Assembly: GCA_950097015.1 (NCBI GenBank)
Contig: CATNEN010000031.1
Coordinates: 248,001-312,000 of the forward strand
Reading direction: 5' to 3'
Origin: Macrostomum hystrix
Taxonomy: Eukaryota > Animalia > Platyhelminthes
DNA: 64,000 nucleotides
Positions 54,645 to 64,000 of the stretch are shown piece by piece. Below the pieces are notes generated by a model, which was not told the origin of the DNA, did not search any database, and worked only from the letters and a program-made list of their open reading frames with translations. A program made the position numbers and the translations under genes. Every line of letters begins with the position of its first letter. Position 1 is the first letter of the stretch.

Positions 54645-55630
54645 TCCATCCTAGATCCCAGATTGATCTGCCATCCTAGATCCCAGATTGATCTGCCATC
54701 CTAGATCCCAGATTGATCTGACATCCTATGTCTCCCATCTCCCATCCTAGATTCTGTCCTTAAGTCCCAATCTGCCATCCTAGATTCTGTCCCCAAGTCC
54801 CAATCTGCCATCCTAGATTCTGTCCCCAAGTCCCAATCTGCCATCCTAGATTCTGCCCTTAAGTCCCAATCTGCCATCCTAGGTCCTATTACCCATCCTA
54901 GATTTTGTTCTTAAGTCCTAATCTGCCATCCTTGGTCTCCCATGTCTCATCCGAGATTCTGTCCTTAAGTCCTAATCTGCCATCCTTGGTCTCCCATGCC
55001 TCATCCGAGATTCTGTCCTTAAATCCTAATCTGCCATCCTTGGTCTCCCATGCCTCATCCGAGATTCTGTCCTTAAATCCTAATCTGCCATCCTTGGTCT
55101 CCCATGCCTCATCCGAGATTCTGTCCTTAAGTCCTAATCTGCCATCCTTGGTCTCCCATGCCTCATCCGAGATTCTGTCCTTAAGTCCTAATCTGCCATC
55201 CTTGGTCTCCCATGTCTCATCCGAGATTCTGTCCTTAAGTCCTAATCTGCCATCCTTGGTCTCCCATGTCTCATCCGAGATTCTGTCCTTAAGTCCTAAT
55301 CTGCCATCCTTGGTCTCCCATGCCTCATCCGAGATTCTGTCCTTAAATCCTAATCTGCCATCCTTGGTCTCCCATGTCTCATCCGAGATTCTGTCCTTAA
55401 GTCCTAATCTGCCATCCTTGGTCTCCCATGTCTCATCCGAGATTCTGTCCTTAAGTCCTAATCTGCCATCCTTGGTCTCCCATGCCTCATCCGAGATTCT
55501 GTCCTTAAATCCTAATCTGCCATCCTTGGTCTCCCATGCCTCATCCGAGATTCTGTCCTTAAATCCTAATCTGCCATCCTTGGTCTCCCATGCCTCATCC
55601 GAGATTCTGTCCTTAAGTCCTAATCTGCCA
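54645..55630. repeat. Composite minisatellite with 25-bp, then 33-bp, then 54-bp units
   Basis: 25-mer x3; 33-mer x4 (starts at 54746, 54779, 54812, 54845); 54-mer x~13. Confidence 0.94.
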
Positions 55631-55729
55631 TTCTAGATTCCTTGCTCCCAACATGCCATCATTGATGCCCAGGTTCCAATCTTTCATCGTGTATTCCAAG
55701 ATTCTGTATTGTTTTCAGTCCAGCTCGCC

Positions 55730-56626
55730 ATGACGCGTCACTCGCGCAACAACACGTCGCACAGCGTGTACACTTATCACGAGAAGCGGCGCGACGCCCA
55801 GGCATCCGAGTACGGCACCAGAGAGATTCGCGTCGGTCGGGACAGTGTGAAAAAGTTCGACTGCTGCTGCCTAACTAATCAGCCGTGCCGCGACCCTGTG
55901 GTCACTCCACAGGGCCATCTGTACGATCGGGAGGCCATCCTGCAGTACATGCTTGAGCAGAAGCAGGAGCTGGCCAGGCAGGCCAAGGCTCGCGAGCGGC
56001 AGCTGGCGACGGAGGCGGCCAGGCTGGAGCGGGAGAAGGCCGAGCGTGAGCGCGAAGCCGAGGTCAGCAAATATCTCAGCGCCAACTGCGTGGCCGCCAA
56101 GGTGCCTGGCACAGATAAGAAGGCCGACGCCGAGCAGCCGCCAGCTGCCTCCAACTTCTGGATCCCTTCGGCAACGCCTTCATCTGCCTCGTCCAGTTCT
56201 GCTGCTGCCGCTTCTTTAATTTCTTCAACGTCGGCGGCCTCGGCGACGTCTAAGAAATCGTCAACCACGCCGTCAAATCAACCGGTCGAGCAAGTCCGCT
56301 GTCCAATGTCCAAGAAGCCGCTAAGATTGAAGGATCTTATTGCGGTGCGATTCAAACCGGCTCCCGGTGGTGGTGGTTACGTTTGCGCCCTCACCGGCGA
56401 CGCGTTGAACGACTCGACGCCGCTCTGTGTCATCCGACCATCTGGCTGCGTTGTCACCAAGGAGGCCGTTGATCGGCTAATTCGGCGAGAAATGCGCGAT
56501 CCGGTCAGCGGGCGCGAGCTTGTGCAGTCGGACATTGTGCCGCTTCAGCGTGGAGCCAGCGGCTTCGCTGGGAGCGGCCACAATCTATTGTCTAAGGATA
56601 CGGGTGTTGTGATGCACGTTGCTTAA
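55730..56626 (+). CDS. NOSIP: Nitric oxide synthase-interacting protein, intronless
   Basis: MTRHSRNNTSHSVYTYHEKRRD..YGT..RVGRDSVKKFDCCCL..QPCRDPVVTPQGHLYDREAILQY..CPMSKKPLRLKDLIAVRF..LQRGASGFAG. AATAAA at 56975. Confidence 0.96.
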   Translation: MTRHSRNNTSHSVYTYHEKRRDAQASEYGTREIRVGRDSVKKFDCCCLTNQPCRDPVVTPQGHLYDREAILQYMLEQKQELARQAKARERQLATEAARLEREKAEREREAEVSKYLSANCVAAKVPGTDKKADAEQPPAASNFWIPSATPSSASSSSAAAASLISSTSAASATSKKSSTTPSNQPVEQVRCPMSKKPLRLKDLIAVRFKPAPGGGGYVCALTGDALNDSTPLCVIRPSGCVVTKEAVDRLIRREMRDPVSGRELVQSDIVPLQRGASGFAGSGHNLLSKDTGVVMHVA

Positions 56627-56992
56627 CTCAAATGCATCTGTGATGCAACTGTGTGCAAATGGGTTGATCGAAGTGCATTTCACAGTTGGGTCTAGTTAGT
56701 GGCTAATTTGTCTAATTTGTTCTGCTCTACGGAAATCACTCTGTCTAACTCAGAATCTTTTGTATCGTGCGGTCTGTATAAATGACGCTCGTATGTGCTA
56801 ATGTACTGACTTGCATATTGCGTTCAATGTTATGTATTGCTTGCACAGCCTCCTCTGAATGCTGCTTTGTATTTGCTTGTTCAAGTCTTTAACTAAACTA
56901 AAATAGACTGAACTGCATTTGTATTCGTGTTCACTGCATCAGTAATTGTAAATGCGTACTCCTTTTATTCGAAAAATAAATCGGAAACAGTG

Positions 56993-57812
56993 AGCCACAC
57001 TCCCAGATCCTCAGGTTAGTCAGCCACACTCCCAGATCCTCAGGTTAGTCAGCCACACTGCCAGATCCTCAGGTTAGTCAGCCACACTCCCAGATCCTCA
57101 GGTTAGTCAGCCACACTGCCAGATCCTCAGGTTAGTCAGCCACACTCCCAGATCCTCAGGTTAGTCAGCCACACTGCCAGATCCTCAGGTTAGTCAGCCA
57201 CACTCCCAGATCCCCAGGTTAGTCAGCCACACTCCCAGATCCTCAGGTTAGTCAGTCACACTCCCAGATCCTCAGGTTAGTCAGCCACACTCCCAGATCC
57301 TCAGGTTAGTCAGCCACACTCCCAGATCCCCAGGTTAGTCAGCCACACTGCCAGATCCTCAGGTTAGTCAGCCACACTCCCAGATCCTCAGGTTAGTCAG
57401 TCACACTCCCAGATCCTCAGGTTAGTCAGCCACACTCCCAGATCCTCAGGTTAGTCAGCCACACTCCCAGATCCCCAGGTTAGTCAGCCACACTGCCAGA
57501 TCCCCAGGTTAGTCAGCCACACTCCCAGATCCCCAGGATTCTCAGCCACACTCCCAGATTCCCAGGTTACTCAGCCACACTCCCAGATTCTCAGGTTACT
57601 CAGCCACACTCCCAGATCCTCAGGTTAGTCAGCCACACTCCCAGATCCTCAGGTTAGTCAGTCACACTCCCAGATCCTCAGGTTAGTCAGCCATACTCCC
57701 AGATCCTCAGGTTAGTCAGCCACACTCCCAGATCCCCAGGTTACTCAGCCACACTCCCAGATCCCCAGGTTACTCAGTCACACTCCCAGATCCCAAGGTT
57801 ACTCAGCCACAC
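56993..57812. repeat. 29-bp minisatellite, array 2, filling the NOSIP-PIGU spacer
   Basis: About 28 tandem copies of the same unit as 51830-52340. Confidence 0.96.
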
Positions 57813-57860
57813 CCTCTATCCCCAAGTTTAGTATCATTGTGTACAATACCACCGCAGCTT

Positions 57861-57885
57861 TAACTAATCGCCACGCAACTTGCAG
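57861..57885 (+). promoter_or_regulatory. Candidate branch point plus 3' splice acceptor (putative SL trans-splice site) at the head of PIGU
   Basis: taACTAATcgccacgcaacttgcAG; the AG ends exactly at a codon boundary of the PIGU frame. Confidence 0.6.
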
Positions 57886-59211
57886 GCACTGACAATATTC
57901 GGCCTGACCGCTGTTGAGCTGGCACTCTGTCTAGCCGGCTGCCTCAGTCGTCTAGCCCTTCGAAGCTGGCTCACTCCACAGTCAGTGCGCGCCTGGTCCA
58001 GCTCACCTGTTGAGACCTGGACTGCGGTGCGCGAATACCTGGCCCTTCGTCGGGCTGGCGTTGACCCCTACGATGGCAGCGTGCTGCACCTGCCGCCGCT
58101 GTCTCTGCGCCTGATGCTGGCCGCCGACAGTCTGCTGGGCGGTGGCAACGGAGAGCGCGCCTGGCCAGTCCTGCTAGCTTTGGAACTGGCGGGCTGCCTG
58201 GCGCTGAAGCGGCTTCTGCGCGAGTTCGGCGCCTACTCCCTGCGGCGACAGGCGGACAACGTCGCCGATTACAGCTCAGCCAGCACCTCCATGCTGCTGT
58301 CTAGCGATAGTCTTCGCCGACTCCGGCTGCCAGTGCTGGCCGTCTACTGGCTCAATCCCTACGGCCTGGCGGATTCAGTTGCCGAGTCGACTGCGCCGCT
58401 TAGCAACCTGCTTATTCTGCTCTGCCTGGCCGAACTCTGCCGCGGCCGGGTCGCCTTCGCCGGAGCACTCTGCGCCGGCGCAGCCTACCACAGCCTGTAC
58501 CCGGCCTGTCTCATTGTGCCAGTCTGCCTGGCTGGCCCGGTTCGTCCGGCCCTTCTGGCGTTCTGTGGCACCCTGGCCAGCCTATTAGCGGCCTCCTTCA
58601 CCCTGTCTGGCGGCAGCTGGGCATTCCTGCACTCAGTGTACGCATTCCACGCTTTGGCGCCGGACCACACGCCCGCCTTCAGCCTGTCCTGGTATCTGTT
58701 CTGCGAAGCTTTCGACCATTTTCGCGGCCTATTTCAGGCGTTGTTCCAAATGAATCTTCTGTGCGCGGTGGCACCGCTGGCCATCAGATTCCGCACTGAT
58801 CCCTGCTTCCTGGCTGTAATTTTCTGGGCCTACACCGCCTCATTCAAGCCCTACTGCTGCGTGTCGGAGCAGGCTGCTGTTGCCTGTCTGTTTGTCATGT
58901 ACGGCCAGCTGCACTCCCACATGCGCCGAGCTCTGGTGGCCATCATCCTCCTGATTGTGGCCTTCGTGCTGGCTCCCATCATGCACCACCTGTGGCTGTA
59001 TCCGGGCAGTGCCAATTCCAATTTCTACTTTGCCATCTCGCTGCTGCATTGCACTGCAATGGCCCTGCTGCTCTACATGTTCTGCATCGCCTATCTGAAG
59101 CGGGAATTCCTGCTGCGCCACGGAGCCGAGCCTCTGAAATTTAGCGACGGAACTGAGGCTAAAATTTTGCTGCAGGCGCCGACAGCAAAGCTGCTGTTCA
59201 TTGGAAAATGA
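57886..59211 (+). CDS. PIGU: GPI transamidase component PIG-U (CDC91/GAB1 family), no internal introns, no genomic ATG for the N-terminus
   Basis: SSPVETWTAVRE..L...GVDPYDGSVLHLPPL, YWLNPY, DHTPAFSLSWYLFCEAFDHFRGLF, HHLWLYPGSANSNFYFAISL, LKREFLLRHG..DGTEAKILL. Confidence 0.93.
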   Translation, partial: ALTIFGLTAVELALCLAGCLSRLALRSWLTPQSVRAWSSSPVETWTAVREYLALRRAGVDPYDGSVLHLPPLSLRLMLAADSLLGGGNGERAWPVLLALELAGCLALKRLLREFGAYSLRRQADNVADYSSASTSMLLSSDSLRRLRLPVLAVYWLNPYGLADSVAESTAPLSNLLILLCLAELCRGRVAFAGALCAGAAYHSLYPACLIVPVCLAGPVRPALLAFCGTLASLLAASFTLSGGSWAFLHSVYAFHALAPDHTPAFSLSWYLFCEAFDHFRGLFQALFQMNLLCAVAPLAIRFRTDPCFLAVIFWAYTASFKPYCCVSEQAAVACLFVMYGQLHSHMRRALVAIILLIVAFVLAPIMHHLWLYPGSANSNFYFAISLLHCTAMALLLYMFCIAYLKREFLLRHGAEPLKFSDGTEAKILLQAPTAKLLFIGK

Positions 59212-59212
59212 T

Positions 59213-62175
59213 TGCTGAGGAAATAATGAATTGGGATTCCTGAACAATTGGTGGGGATCTGAGAAGATTATGGACCAGGGATTACTAAACAATTCTTGTG
59301 GATCTCAGGAAATGATGGACTAGGGATTACTAAACAATTCTTGTGGATCTCAGGAAATGATTGGCTAGGGATTCCTGAACAATTGGTGGGGATCTGAGGA
59401 AATGATGGGCTAGGGATTCCTGAACAATTGGTGGGGATCTGAGGAAATGATGGGCTAGGGATTCCTGAACAATTGGTGGGGATCTGAGGAAATGATGGGC
59501 TAGGGATTCCTGAACGATTGGTGGGGATCTGAGGAAATGATGCACTAGGGATTCCTGAACAATTGGTGGGGATCTGAGGAAATGATGGGCTAGGGATTCC
59601 TGAACAATTGGTGGGGATCTGAGGAAATGATGGGCTAGGGATTCCTGAACAATTGGTGGGGATCTGAGGAAATGATGGGCTAGGGATTCCTGAACAATTG
59701 GTGGGGATCTGAGGAAATGATGGGCTAGGGATTCCTGAACAATTGGTGGGGATCTGAGGAAATGATGGGCTAGGGATTCCTGAACAATTGGTGGGGATCT
59801 GAGGAAATGATGGACTAGGGATTCCTGAACAATTGGTGGGGATCTGAGGAAATGATGGACTAGGGATTCCTGAACAATTGGTGGGGATCTGAGGAAATGA
59901 TGGGCTAGGGATTCCTGAACAATTGGTGGGGATCTGAGGAAATGATGGACTAGGGATTCCTGAACAATTGGTGGGGATCTGAGGAAATGATGGACTAGGG
60001 ATTCCTGAACAATTGGTGGGGATCTGAGGAAATGATGGGCTAGGGATTCCTGAACAATTGGTGGGGATCTGAGGAAATGATGGACTAGGGATTCCTGAAC
60101 AATTGGTGGGGATCTGAGGAAATGATGGACTAGGGATTCCTGAACAATTGGTGGGGATCTGAGGAAATGATGGGCTAGGGATTCCTGAACAATTGGTGGG
60201 GATCTGAGGAAATGATTGGCTAGGGATTCCTGAACAATTGGTGGGGATCTGAGGAAATGATGGACTAGGGATTCCTGAACAATTGGTGGGGATCTGAGGA
60301 AATGATGGACTAGGGATTCCTGAACAATTGGTGGGGATCTGAGGAAATGATGGACTAGGGATTCCTGAACAATTGGTGGGGATCTGAGGAAATAATGAAT
60401 TGGGATTCCTGAACAATTGGTGGGGATCTGAGAAGATTATGGACCAGGGATTCCTGAACAATTGGTGGGGATCTGAGAAGATTATGGACCAGGGATTCCT
60501 GAACAATTGGTGGGGATCTGAGGAAATGATGGACTAGGGATTCCTGAACAATTGGTGGGGATCTGAGGAAATAATGAATTGGGATTCCTGAACAATTGGT
60601 GGGGATCTGAGGAAATAATGAATTGGGATTCCTGAACAATTGGTGGGGATCTGAGAAGATTATGGACCAGGGATTCCTGAACAATTGGTGGGGATCTGAG
60701 GAAATGATGGACTAGGGATTCCTGAACAATTGGTGGGGATCTGAGGAAATGATGGACTAGGGATTCCTGAACAATTGGTGGGGATCTGAGGAAATGATGG
60801 ACTAGGGATTCCTGAACAATTGGTGGGGATCTGAGGAAATGATGGGCTAGGGATTCCTGAACAATTGGTGGGGATCTGAGGAAATGATGGACTAGGGATT
60901 CCTGAACAATTGGTGGGGATCTGAGGAAATGATGGACTAGGGATTCCTGAACAATTGGTGGGGATCTGAGGAAATGATGGACTAGGGATTCCTGAACAAT
61001 TGGTGGGGATCTGAGGAAATGATGGACTAGGGATTCCTGAACAATTGGTGGGGATCTGAGGAAATGATGGACTAGGGATTCCTGAACAATTGGTGGGGAT
61101 CTGAGGAAATGATGGACTAGGGATTCCTGAACAATTGGTGGGGATCTGAGGAAATGATGGACTAGGGATTCCTGAACAATTGGTGGGGATCTGAGGAAAT
61201 GATGGACTAGGGATTCCTGAACAATTGGTGGGGATCTGAGGAAATGATGGACTAGGGATTCCTGAACAATTGGTGGGGATCTGAGGAAATGATGGACTAG
61301 GGATTCCTGAACAATTGGTGGGGATCTGAGGAAATGATGGACTAGGGATTCCTGAACAATTGGTGGGGATCTGAGGAAATGATGGACTAGGGATTCCTGA
61401 ACAATTGGTGGGGATCTGAGGAAATGATGGGCTAGGGATTCCTGAACAATTGGTGGGGATCTGAGGAAATGATGGACTAGGGATTCCTGAACAATTGGTG
61501 GGGATCTGAGGAAATGATGGGCTAGGGATTCCTGAACAATTGGTGGGGATCTGAGGAAATGATGGGCTAGGGATTCCTGAACAATTGGTGGGGATCTGAG
61601 GAAATGATGGGCTAGGGATTCCTGAACGATTGGTGGGGATCTGAGGAAATGATGCACTAGGGATTCCTGAACAATTGGTGGGGATCTGAGGAAATGATGG
61701 GCTAGGGATTCCTGAACAATTGGTGGGGATCTGAGGAAATGATGGGCTAGGGATTCCTGAACAATTGGTGGGGATCTGAGGAAATGATGGGCTAGGGATT
61801 CCTGAACAATTGGTGGGGATCTGAGGAAATGATGGGCTAGGGATTCCTGAACAATTGGTGGGGATCTGAGGAAATGATGGGCTAGGGATTCCTGAACAAT
61901 TGGTGGGGATCTGAGGAAATGATGGACTAGGGATTCCTGAACAATTGGTGGGGATCTGAGGAAATGATGGACTAGGGATTCCTGAACAATTGGTGGGGAT
62001 CTGAGGAAATGATGGGCTAGGGATTCCTGAACAATTGGTGGGGATCTGAGGAAATGATGGACTAGGGATTCCTGAACAATTGGTGGGGATCTGAGGAAAT
62101 GATGGACTAGGGATTCCTGAACAATTGGTGGGGATCTGAGGAAATGATGGACTAGGGATTCCTGAACAATTGGTT
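59213..62175. repeat. 45-bp satellite (GGATTCCTGAACAATTGGTGGGGATCTGAGGAAATGATGGACTAG)n
   Basis: About 65 tandem copies with no spacers. Confidence 0.98.
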
Positions 62176-62699: not shown

Positions 62700-63445
62700 T
62701 TACCTGTCTCTTTGTCTGCCCGTATCTTTACCTGTCACTTTGTCTGCCCGTATCTTTACCTGTCACTTTGTCTGCCCGTATCTTTACCTGTCTCTTTGTC
62801 TGCCCGTATCTTTACCTGTCACTTTGTCTGCCCGTATCTTTACCTGTCTCATTGTCTGCCCGTATCTTTACCTGTCTCTTTGTCTGCCCGTATCTTTACC
62901 TGTCTCTTTGTCTGCCCGTATCTTTACCTGTCTCTTTGTCTGCCCGTATCTTTACCTGTCTCATTGTCTGCCCGTATCTTTACCTGTCTCTTTGTCTGCC
63001 CGTATCTTTACCTGTCTCTTTGTCTGCCCGTATCTTTACCTGTCTCTTTGTCTGCCCGTATCTTTACCTGTCTCTTTGTCTGCCCGTATCTTTACCTGTC
63101 ACTTTGTCTGCCCGTATCTTTACCTGTCACTTTGTCTGCCCGTATCTTTACCTGTCACTTTGTCTGCCCGTATCTTTACCTGTCTCTTTGTCTGCCCGTA
63201 TCTTTACCTGTCTCTTTGTCTGCCCGTATCTTTACCTGTCTCATTGTCTGCCCGTATCTTTACCTGTCTCTTTGTCTGCCCGTATCTTTACCTGTCTCTT
63301 TGTCTGCCCGTATCTTTACCTGTCTCTTTGTCTGCCCGTATCTTTACCTGTCACTTTGTCTGCCCGTATCTTTACCTGTCTCTTTGTCTGCCCGGATCTT
63401 TACCTGTCTCTTTGTCTGCCCGTATCTTTACCTGTCACTTTGTCT
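62700..63445. repeat. 28-bp minisatellite (TGTCTGCCCGTATCTTTACCTGTCTCTT)n
   Basis: About 26 tandem copies. Confidence 0.96.
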
Positions 63446-63469
63446 CAGTTTCAAGTCATCCTTCCGTCT

Positions 63470-64000
63470 GTCTCCTACCTGTCTGTCCGTCTCCCAACTG
63501 TCCGTATCTTACCTGTCCGTCTCCTACCTGTCCGTCTCCTACAAGTCCGTCTCCTACCTGTCCGTCTCCTACCTGTCCGTCTCCTACCTGTCCGTCTCCT
63601 AGCTGTCCGTCTCCTAGCTGTCCATCTCCTAGCTATCCGTCTCCTACCTGTATGCCTCCTAGCTGTCCGTCTCCTACCTGTCTGTCTCCTAGCTGTCTGT
63701 CTCCTACCTGTATGCCTCCGAGCTGTCCGTCTCCTACCTGTATGCCTCCTAGCTGTCCGTCTCCTACCTGTCCGTATCTTACCTGTCCGTCTCCTACCTG
63801 TATGCCTCCTAGCTGTCCGTCTCCTACCTGTCCGTATCTTACCTGTCCGTCTCCTACCTGTATGCCTCCTAGCTGTCCGTCTCCTACCTGTCCGTATCTT
63901 ACCTGTCCGTCTCCTACCTGTCCGCATCTAACCTGTCCGTCTCCTACCTGTCCGTCTCCTACCTGCCCATCTCCTGCCAGTCCTTATCTTACCTGTCCGC
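63470..64000. repeat. 15-bp minisatellite (CTGTCCGTCTCCTAC)n, continuing to the window edge
   Basis: Tandem copies with a few variant units. Confidence 0.95.

What the first reader, a model, noticed from the sequence alone, without database searches (positions are those of the whole stretch)
57861..58120. PIGU appears to borrow its start codon from a spliced leader
Seen: an in-frame TAA lies at 57865 and the first in-frame ATG is ~75 codons in, yet PIG-U similarity (N-terminal hydrophobic segment and the SPVETW motif) lies upstream of that ATG. A branch-like ACTAAT and TTGCAG end at 57885, exactly on a codon boundary. Established: flatworm spliced leaders end in AUG, which can serve as the initiator. 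Inference: SL-AUG + GCA CTG ACA gives MALTIFGL..., a full-length PIG-U, so translation of this GPI-transamidase subunit would depend on trans-splicing.
Basis: partly seen in the sequence, partly recalled or inferred. Interest (0 to 1): 0.8.

Follow-up and report, generated by a model that had tools for sequence, protein, structure and literature searches.

The report
Spliced leader supplies PIG-U start codon
In this Macrostomum-type flatworm the gene for the PIG-U subunit of the GPI-anchor-attaching enzyme has no usable start codon of its own, and assembled transcripts show the trans-spliced leader, which ends in AUG, joined exactly in frame in front of it; this is a new example of a mechanism already known in flatworms.

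Summary

- **The gene.** An intronless PIG-U reading frame runs 57886-59211 (Pfam PF06728, E 7e-76). It has an in-frame TAA at 57865 and no in-frame ATG before codon 77 (58114). PIG-U homology starts at residues 14-19.
- **The junction.** Contigs from two public runs of one study begin with TGCGAAGACTCAATTTATTGCAT and then match the window from 57885. That is the 3' end of the published 35-nt Macrostomum lignano spliced leader (SL), which ends in ATG. It is joined at 57885|57886 and gives ATG GCA CTG ACA, MALTIFGL.
- **The homologue.** The M. lignano homologue (85% identical, labelled "partial" at NCBI) has the same layout: NOSIP upstream, an AG acceptor directly before GCG CTA ACG, and its first in-frame ATG at codon 77.
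- **Selection.** Codons 1-76 are under strong purifying selection (dN/dS 0.046 at dS 0.97).
- **Rivals.** The TTG at 57880 lies in the removed outron. The CTG at codon 2 is CTA in the homologue. No ATG in any frame lies within 933 nt upstream.

Initiation at the SL AUG itself is inferred, not shown. The mechanism has been known since Cheng et al. 2006, and this scan has already noted and twice confirmed it on other DNA of this genome. This is a new member of a known kind, of modest interest.

The parts
57886..59211 (+). Single-exon PIG-U coding sequence without its own initiator (441 codons plus stop at 59209-59211). It is the first exon of the trans-spliced mRNA.
   Evidence: ORF. Pfam PF06728 at E 7.4e-76. 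Human PIGU chains 8imx_U and 7wld_U at E 2e-50, aligned over residues 14-440. Covered end to end by the SL-bearing contigs.
57880..57885 (+). Trans-splice acceptor TTGCAG. The SL is joined between 57885 and 57886.
   Evidence: Loose-end and piece tables: the contigs fit from 57885, whose G is shared by the acceptor AG and the SL ATG. The hexamer fits the [T/C]TNCAG motif that is most enriched at M. lignano SL acceptors (PMC8629364).
57865..57867 (+). In-frame TAA that closes the frame 6 codons upstream of the acceptor. It lies in the outron.
57863..57868 (+). ACTAAT, a candidate branch point with its A 18 nt before the AG.
   Evidence: Sequence only. It is a consensus match that chance could give, it is not conserved in L001, and it was not tested.
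58114..58116 (+). First genomic in-frame ATG (codon 77). Starting here would delete the N-terminal hydrophobic segment and eight conserved PIG-U positions.
   Evidence: The hydropathy maximum of 1.92 falls on residues 1-19.
56989..57812 (+). Tandem array of a 29-bp unit (28 copies) filling most of the NOSIP-to-PIG-U spacer (the outron). It contains no ATG.
   Evidence: No ATG in any frame lies between 56953 and 57885.
55730..56626 (+). Upstream same-strand gene NOSIP, which has its own ATG, with an AATAAA at 56976-56981. It is the likely upstream partner of an operon-like unit.
   Evidence: Pfam zf-NOSIP at E 3.8e-33. Sequence. The NOSIP-then-PIG-U order is conserved in M. lignano locus L001.

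Best explanation
PIG-U in this Macrostomum-type flatworm is an intronless gene whose coding sequence begins directly at a trans-splice acceptor (TTGCAG|GCA, 57885|57886). The pre-mRNA probably reads through from or behind the upstream NOSIP gene. It loses its outron, and the 35-nt spliced leader, whose last three bases are AUG, is joined there. That AUG is in frame and is the only AUG that can give a full-length, 442-residue PIG-U (MALTIFGL...). Synthesis of a functional GPI-transamidase PIG-U subunit therefore depends on SL trans-splicing.

Shown: the SL-exon junction, the frame, the lack of a genomic start codon, and conservation and selection on the region before the first ATG.

Inferred: ribosomes initiate at the SL AUG, and the gene is a downstream member of an operon.
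For: 1; contigs of runs X4 and X6 (k-mer depth 21.5 and 24.9) carry TGCGAAGACTCAATTTATTGCAT before 57885 and match the window through 59240. No contig covers 57835-57884, so only the SL-joined form is present in those runs.
2; the published M. lignano SL ends ...TGCGAAGACTCAATTTATTGCATG and is followed by a GTAAG donor in the SL RNA gene.
3. ATG plus GCA CTG ACA is in frame. There is a TAA 6 codons upstream and the first genomic in-frame ATG is at codon 77.
4. PIG-U homology starts at residues 14-19. The N-terminus with the SL Met is collinear with human PIGU to within about 1 residue.
5; the M. lignano homologue P0001 (85% identical, annotated 'partial') has CCGCAG|GCG CTA ACG, no in-frame ATG between the stop 36 codons upstream and codon 77, and NOSIP upstream. 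Nucleotide identity falls from 81% in the first 228 coding nt to about 60-65% upstream of the AG.
6; dN/dS for codons 1-76 is 0.046 (dS 0.97), against 0.131 for the rest.
7. SL-AUG initiation was demonstrated in Schistosoma (Cheng et al. 2006, as cited in PMC9851317 and PMC12582326). PMC10468722 notes that Macrostomum SLs end in an ATG that is probably a start codon.
Against: - No protein-level or ribosome-profiling evidence shows that the SL AUG is the initiator.
- The AUG context is weak at -3 (U), although +4 is G.
- The junction rests on assembled Logan contigs from two runs of a single study, and those runs' library type is not on record. That they are RNA is inferred from the SL-joined form and the absence of the genomic upstream sequence. 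Contigs drop rare isoforms, so a minor cis-spliced or unspliced form cannot be excluded.
- A CTG at codon 7 is conserved in both loci and could in principle serve as a near-cognate start.
Confidence: 0.85

Rival explanations
1. A small cis-spliced upstream exon carries the real ATG and is joined to the same acceptor at 57885. The SL form is then an alternative or minor product.
For: Parasitic flatworms share 3' acceptors extensively between cis- and trans-splicing (PMC12582326). In another case in this genome, a follow-up found a tiny upstream ATG exon (note s1-316733). Contigs cannot show rare isoforms.
Against: Both contigs that reach the acceptor carry the SL, not another exon. There is no ATG in any frame for 933 nt upstream, 56953-57885. 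That stretch is mostly a 29-bp tandem array and the NOSIP 3' end with AATAAA. The upstream sequence is not conserved with L001.
Confidence: 0.05
2. Translation starts at a non-AUG codon: TTG at 57880, CTG at codon 2, or CTG at codon 7. The SL AUG is skipped.
For: Near-cognate codons exist at these places. CTG at codon 7 is present in both loci. The SL AUG has U at -3.
Against: TTG 57880 is part of the acceptor hexamer and is removed with the outron; it is CCG in L001. Codon 2 is CTG here but CTA in L001. A scanning ribosome meets the in-frame SL AUG first, and its use has been demonstrated in schistosomes (Cheng 2006). Codons 1-6 are conserved: ALTIFG here, ALTVFG in L001.
Confidence: 0.05
3. 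The protein starts at the first genomic ATG (codon 77, at 58114). The upstream 76 codons are then an untranslated leader or a decaying remnant, that is, a truncated or pseudogenised PIG-U.
For: It is the first in-frame ATG in the genomic sequence, in both the window and L001.
Against: Codons 1-76 show dN/dS 0.046 at dS 0.97 and 92% amino-acid identity, which is tighter than the rest of the gene. They hold the N-terminal hydrophobic segment and eight positions invariant among 9 PIG-U homologues, and they align to human PIGU. The whole ORF is intact and is present in the SL-joined contigs.
Confidence: 0.03

Closest known systems
SL-AUG-initiated mRNAs of Schistosoma mansoni (Cheng, Cohen, Ndegwa & Davis, J Biol Chem 2006; as cited in PMC9851317 and PMC12582326)
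   Same: The flatworm SL ends in AUG and is joined in frame to an ORF that lacks its own initiator, so the SL supplies the initiator methionine. PMC9851317 reports that more than 40 schistosome cDNAs need the SL AUG.
   Different: The lineage differs (free-living Macrostomorpha, not Neodermata), the SL sequence differs, and the gene differs (PIG-U). Here translation from the SL AUG was not tested experimentally.
Macrostomum lignano SL trans-splicing and operons (Ustyantsev & Berezikov 2021, PMC8629364; Wiberg et al. 2023, PMC10468722)
   Same: The last 24 nt of the SL are identical. The acceptor fits [T/C]TNCAG. The repeat-adjusted distance to the upstream same-strand gene is under 1 kb, as in the operons those authors defined. 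PMC10468722 states that the SL probably includes the final ATG as a start codon.
   Different: As far as I read them, those papers do not list genes that depend on the SL AUG. PIG-U is not named in any paper found. The window is 15% diverged in protein from the M. lignano copy, so it is another species or a divergent paralogous region.
Human PIGU / yeast Gab1, subunit of GPI transamidase (PDB 7wld, 7w72, 8imx; 9ub7)
   Same: It belongs to the same Pfam family, with a full-length alignment (E 2e-50), and the N-terminus is collinear once the SL Met is added.
   Different: The human gene carries its own ATG (my own knowledge, not tested here). The flatworm gene is a single exon here and has none.
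Other ATG-less genes noted by this scan in the same genome (CHMP6, s1-408126; tyrosyl-tRNA synthetase and peptidase, s1-316733)
   Same: The pattern is the same: an in-frame N-terminus starting exactly at an acceptor. In those follow-ups the SL-AUG junction was reported from RNA data.
   Different: The genes and the DNA differ. Those notes were not re-tested here and are not counted as evidence.

Membership tests
SL-AUG-dependent (slORF) flatworm mRNAs | The organism's spliced leader ends in AUG. | tested here: met
   The loose end ...TTATTGCAT plus the G at 57885 equals the 3' end of the published SL ending in ATG.
SL-AUG-dependent (slORF) flatworm mRNAs | The SL is joined to this mRNA at a canonical AG acceptor. 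| tested here: met
   Contigs of X4 and X6 show the SL followed by the window from 57885 to 59240. The acceptor is TTGCAG.
SL-AUG-dependent (slORF) flatworm mRNAs | The SL AUG is in frame with the conserved ORF, with no stop between. | tested here: met
   57886 is a codon boundary, and the frame is open over 57886-59208.
SL-AUG-dependent (slORF) flatworm mRNAs | No genomic AUG can give the full-length protein. | tested here: met
   The first in-frame ATG is at codon 77, downstream of conserved PIG-U residues. There is an upstream in-frame TAA and no ATG in any frame for 933 nt.
SL-AUG-dependent (slORF) flatworm mRNAs | Ribosomes actually initiate at the SL AUG. | not testable with these tools
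   This needs Ribo-seq, N-terminal proteomics or a reporter. It is inferred from selection on codons 1-76 and from the schistosome precedent.
PIG-U / Gab1 (Pfam PF06728) | Full-length match above the family's gathering score. | tested here: met
   256.1 bits against a cut-off of 24.5, profile positions 4-377 of 378. Human PIGU at E 2e-50 and yeast Gab1 at E 1.5e-30.
PIG-U / Gab1 (Pfam PF06728) | It acts as a subunit of the GPI transamidase complex. | not tested
   Assumed from homology only.
Macrostomum operon, downstream gene | The gene is SL trans-spliced, with a same-strand upstream gene at a repeat-adjusted distance under 1 kb (criterion of PMC8629364). | tested here: met
   From the NOSIP stop (56626) to the acceptor (57885) is 1259 nt. 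Subtracting the 824-nt tandem array leaves 435 nt.
Macrostomum operon, downstream gene | A polycistronic precursor RNA spans both genes. | not tested
   The single read-laying run covered only 57790-59240, and contigs cannot show a precursor.

The most novel reading that the evidence does not exclude
The loss of a genomic start codon in PIG-U is old and fixed. It is shared by two Macrostomum lineages separated by dS of about 0.8-1, together with the NOSIP-then-PIG-U gene order. It may be one of a large class of essential housekeeping genes in this genus, many of them flagged by the scan, whose translation is obligatorily coupled to trans-splicing. SL supply would then act as a global gate on production of GPI-anchoring and other core machinery.
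Probability: 0.3. Interest if true: 0.45.

Novelty: new member of a known kind. Interest (0 to 1): 0.3.

Why it matters
- **Annotation.** The NCBI model of the M. lignano homologue is labelled "partial" because no start codon is found. Gene finders will truncate such genes to an internal Met or drop them. Knowing that the SL supplies the AUG gives the correct 442-residue protein.
- **Biology.** An essential ER enzyme subunit cannot be made from this locus without trans-splicing. The arrangement is kept under strong purifying selection in two diverged Macrostomum loci, so it is stable and not a transient accident.
- **Limits.** It adds a free-living flatworm example, with comparative evidence, to a mechanism demonstrated in schistosomes. 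It does not change the understanding of that mechanism.

Tried and rejected
- I searched the window for the SL sequence, to find an SL RNA gene or a retro-copied SL. There were 0 matches at up to 2 mismatches, so the leader letters in the contigs do not come from this DNA.
- I looked for a cis exon. There is no ATG in any frame for 933 nt upstream, and the contigs show no joint inside the laid stretch.
- TTG 57880 and CTG at codon 2 were rejected as starts. The first is in the outron and the second is not conserved.
- The Met77 start and the pseudogene reading were rejected by dN/dS and by conserved residues.
- Cheng et al. 2006 could not be read. It is cited only through papers that describe it.
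- Runs X1 and X2, from another study, hold pieces of the gene at 99% identity or more, but none reaches the junction. They give no independent support for the SL joint.
- The species was not identified. Run organisms are coded, and the window's own protein is not in the protein collection. The nearest is M. lignano at 85% identity.
- I made no search with a joined SL-plus-exon sequence. The exon was searched by reference only. The SL Met was prefixed only inside a hydropathy script.
- The large representative-protein search and structure prediction were not used, because the family assignment was not in doubt.

Full report
**1. The observation**

- TAA lies at 57865-57867 and ACTAAT at 57863-57868.
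- TTGCAG lies at 57880-57885. GCA CTG ACA ATA TTC GGC then starts at 57886, in the frame of the TAA.
- That frame stays open for 441 codons, to the stop at 59209-59211.
- A script found no in-frame ATG between the TAA and 58114, which is codon 77 counted from 57886.

The product is PIG-U.
- Pfam PF06728 scores 256 bits (E 7.4e-76) over residues 19-387, profile positions 4-377 of 378.
- Human PIGU chains from solved GPI-transamidase structures (8imx_U, 7wld_U, 7w72_U) align over residues 14-440 at E 2e-50. Query residue 14 sits opposite chain residue 15.
- The flatworm frame therefore begins within about one residue of where human PIGU begins, and only the methionine is missing.
- In an alignment of nine PIG-U homologues, eight invariant columns (R35, P41, E50, P61, Y62, G64, H68, P71) lie before codon 77.
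- The most hydrophobic 19-residue window of the N-terminal 100 residues is residues 1-19.

**2. What the RNA data show**

A search for public runs holding 57813-59211 returned seven runs from two studies. I laid four of them on 57790-59240, a stretch short enough to avoid the flanking tandem arrays.

- In X4 and X6 (one study, two samples), a 1401-nt contig starts with 23 letters that do not fit the window, TGCGAAGACTCAATTTATTGCAT. It then fits from 57885 to 59240 with 1 to 4 differences.
- The G at 57885 is shared between the genomic AG and the leader's final G.
- The 24 nt TGCGAAGACTCAATTTATTGCATG are identical to the 3' end of the published 35-nt M. lignano spliced leader, CGGTCTCTTACTGCGAAGACTCAATTTATTGCATG. 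In the SL RNA gene that leader is followed by a GTAAG donor (PMC8629364).
- With a canonical AG acceptor the joint is 57885|57886. The mRNA reads ...UUAUUGCAUG GCA CUG ACA..., that is, M-A-L-T-I-F-G-L.
- No contig in those runs covers 57835-57884, so they hold the gene only in the SL-joined form.
- The runs' library type is not on record. That they are RNA is my inference, from the SL-joined form and from their small total size (42-47 million letters of contigs).
- Runs X1 and X2, from a second study, hold pieces of the ORF at 99% identity or more, but none reaches the joint. The junction therefore rests on one study.
- The leader sequence does not occur in the window (0 matches at up to 2 mismatches), so it comes from elsewhere, as a trans-spliced leader must.

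**3. Comparative evidence**

The word-based protein search gave one close relative, P0001. It is [quoted passage not shown], 85% identical over the full length. Its contig (locus L001, GCA_002269645.1) has NOSIP directly upstream on the same strand, as in the window.

- The sequence there reads ...aaccaaaCCGCAG|GCG CTA ACG GTA TTC GGT: an AG acceptor at the same codon boundary.
- There is no in-frame ATG between the upstream stop, 36 codons back, and codon 77. Codon 77 is again the first in-frame ATG.
- Nucleotide identity is 81% over the first 228 coding nt. It falls to about 60-65% in global alignments of the 30-100 nt before the AG, so conservation begins at the acceptor.
- Nei-Gojobori counts give dN/dS 0.046 (dS 0.97) for codons 1-76, against 0.131 (dS 0.75) for codons 77 to the end. 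Amino-acid identity is 92% against 83%.
- The region before the first ATG is thus the most constrained part of the protein. It must be translated, in two loci that both lack a genomic start codon.

**4. Rivals**

- **A cis-spliced ATG exon.** The contigs carry the SL, not another exon. The nearest ATG in any frame is at 56952, which is 933 nt upstream. The ground between is the NOSIP 3' end, with AATAAA at 56976-56981, and a 29-bp tandem array at 56989-57812. A rare isoform cannot be excluded from contigs.
- **Non-AUG starts.** TTG 57880 is part of the acceptor hexamer and is removed; it is CCG in L001. CTG at codon 2 is CTA in L001. CTG at codon 7 is conserved, but it lies downstream of an in-frame AUG that scanning ribosomes meet first.
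- **Start at Met77, or a pseudogene.** Both are contradicted by selection and by the conserved residues in codons 1-76.

**5. Mechanism**

Shown:
- SL addition at 57885|57886.
- The frame, the absence of a genomic initiator, and purifying selection on codons 1-76.

Inferred:
- The SL AUG is the initiator.
- PIG-U is a downstream gene of an operon-like unit with NOSIP. From the NOSIP stop to the acceptor is 1259 nt, of which 824 nt are tandem repeat, leaving 435 nt. This is below the 1-kb repeat-adjusted threshold that Ustyantsev and Berezikov used to call M. lignano operons.
- From the AATAAA to the acceptor, the non-repeat spacer is only about 80 nt, near their main mode of about 100 bp.
- TTGCAG fits their top trans-acceptor motif, [T/C]TNCAG.
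- The AUG context is U at -3 and G at +4.
- ACTAAT is a possible branch site, but only a consensus match.

**6. Comparison with what is known**

- All reported flatworm SLs end in AUG. Cheng et al. 2006 showed that it can serve as the initiator, and more than 40 schistosome cDNAs need it (as described in PMC12582326 and PMC9851317). The 2006 paper itself is not held.
- For Macrostomum, Wiberg et al. [quoted passage not shown]
- No paper found links PIG-U or GPI transamidase with a spliced leader.
- This scan has already flagged many ATG-less genes on other DNA of this genome. Follow-up notes report RNA-supported SL-AUG junctions for CHMP6, and for a tyrosyl-tRNA synthetase and a peptidase. I did not re-test those and do not count them as evidence, but they show the pattern is recurrent here.

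**7. Verdict**

PIG-U is a well-documented new member of a known class, SL-AUG-dependent flatworm mRNAs, with the added point that the arrangement is conserved and selected across two diverged Macrostomum loci. Interest is 0.3.

Noticed in passing
window 55712-55735: NOSIP has an acceptor-like TTTTCAG ending at 55718, 11 nt before its own ATG at 55730. If the SL is joined there, the SL AUG opens a 5-codon upstream ORF (MSSSP*) whose TGA overlaps the NOSIP ATG (ATGA). That layout would allow termination-reinitiation. No read evidence was obtained.
   Followed up: partly
window 58256: All four runs, from both studies, read C where the window has A. This changes codon 124 from GAC (Asp) to GCC (Ala). 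Ala is also the residue in the M. lignano homologue, so the window's A is a rare allele or an assembly error. 59166 T>C is a synonymous polymorphism seen in two runs.
   Followed up: partly
window 54646-55631, 56989-57812, 59215-62174, 62700-63999: The genes sit between long minisatellite arrays with units of 25, 33, 54, 29, 45, 28 and 15 bp. The 45-bp array has 66 copies over 3 kb and starts 4 nt after the PIG-U stop. The arrays create long spurious ORFs on both strands. The PIG-U contigs run into the 45-bp array, so it is part of the 3' UTR.
   Followed up: partly
window 55730-56626 and 57886-59211; L001 1610-4323: NOSIP and PIG-U are each a single uninterrupted ORF (intronless) and adjacent on the same strand, both in the window and in M. 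lignano. From my own knowledge, PIGU has many exons in vertebrates. An amidase gene follows in L001.
   Followed up: no
window 57790-57834: Short contigs of X4 and X6 (449-480 nt, depth 38-61, minus strand, 4 differences and a gap) touch the last copies of the 29-bp array and then run on into unrelated sequence. They are probably transcripts from another copy of this repeat family elsewhere in the genome.
   Followed up: no
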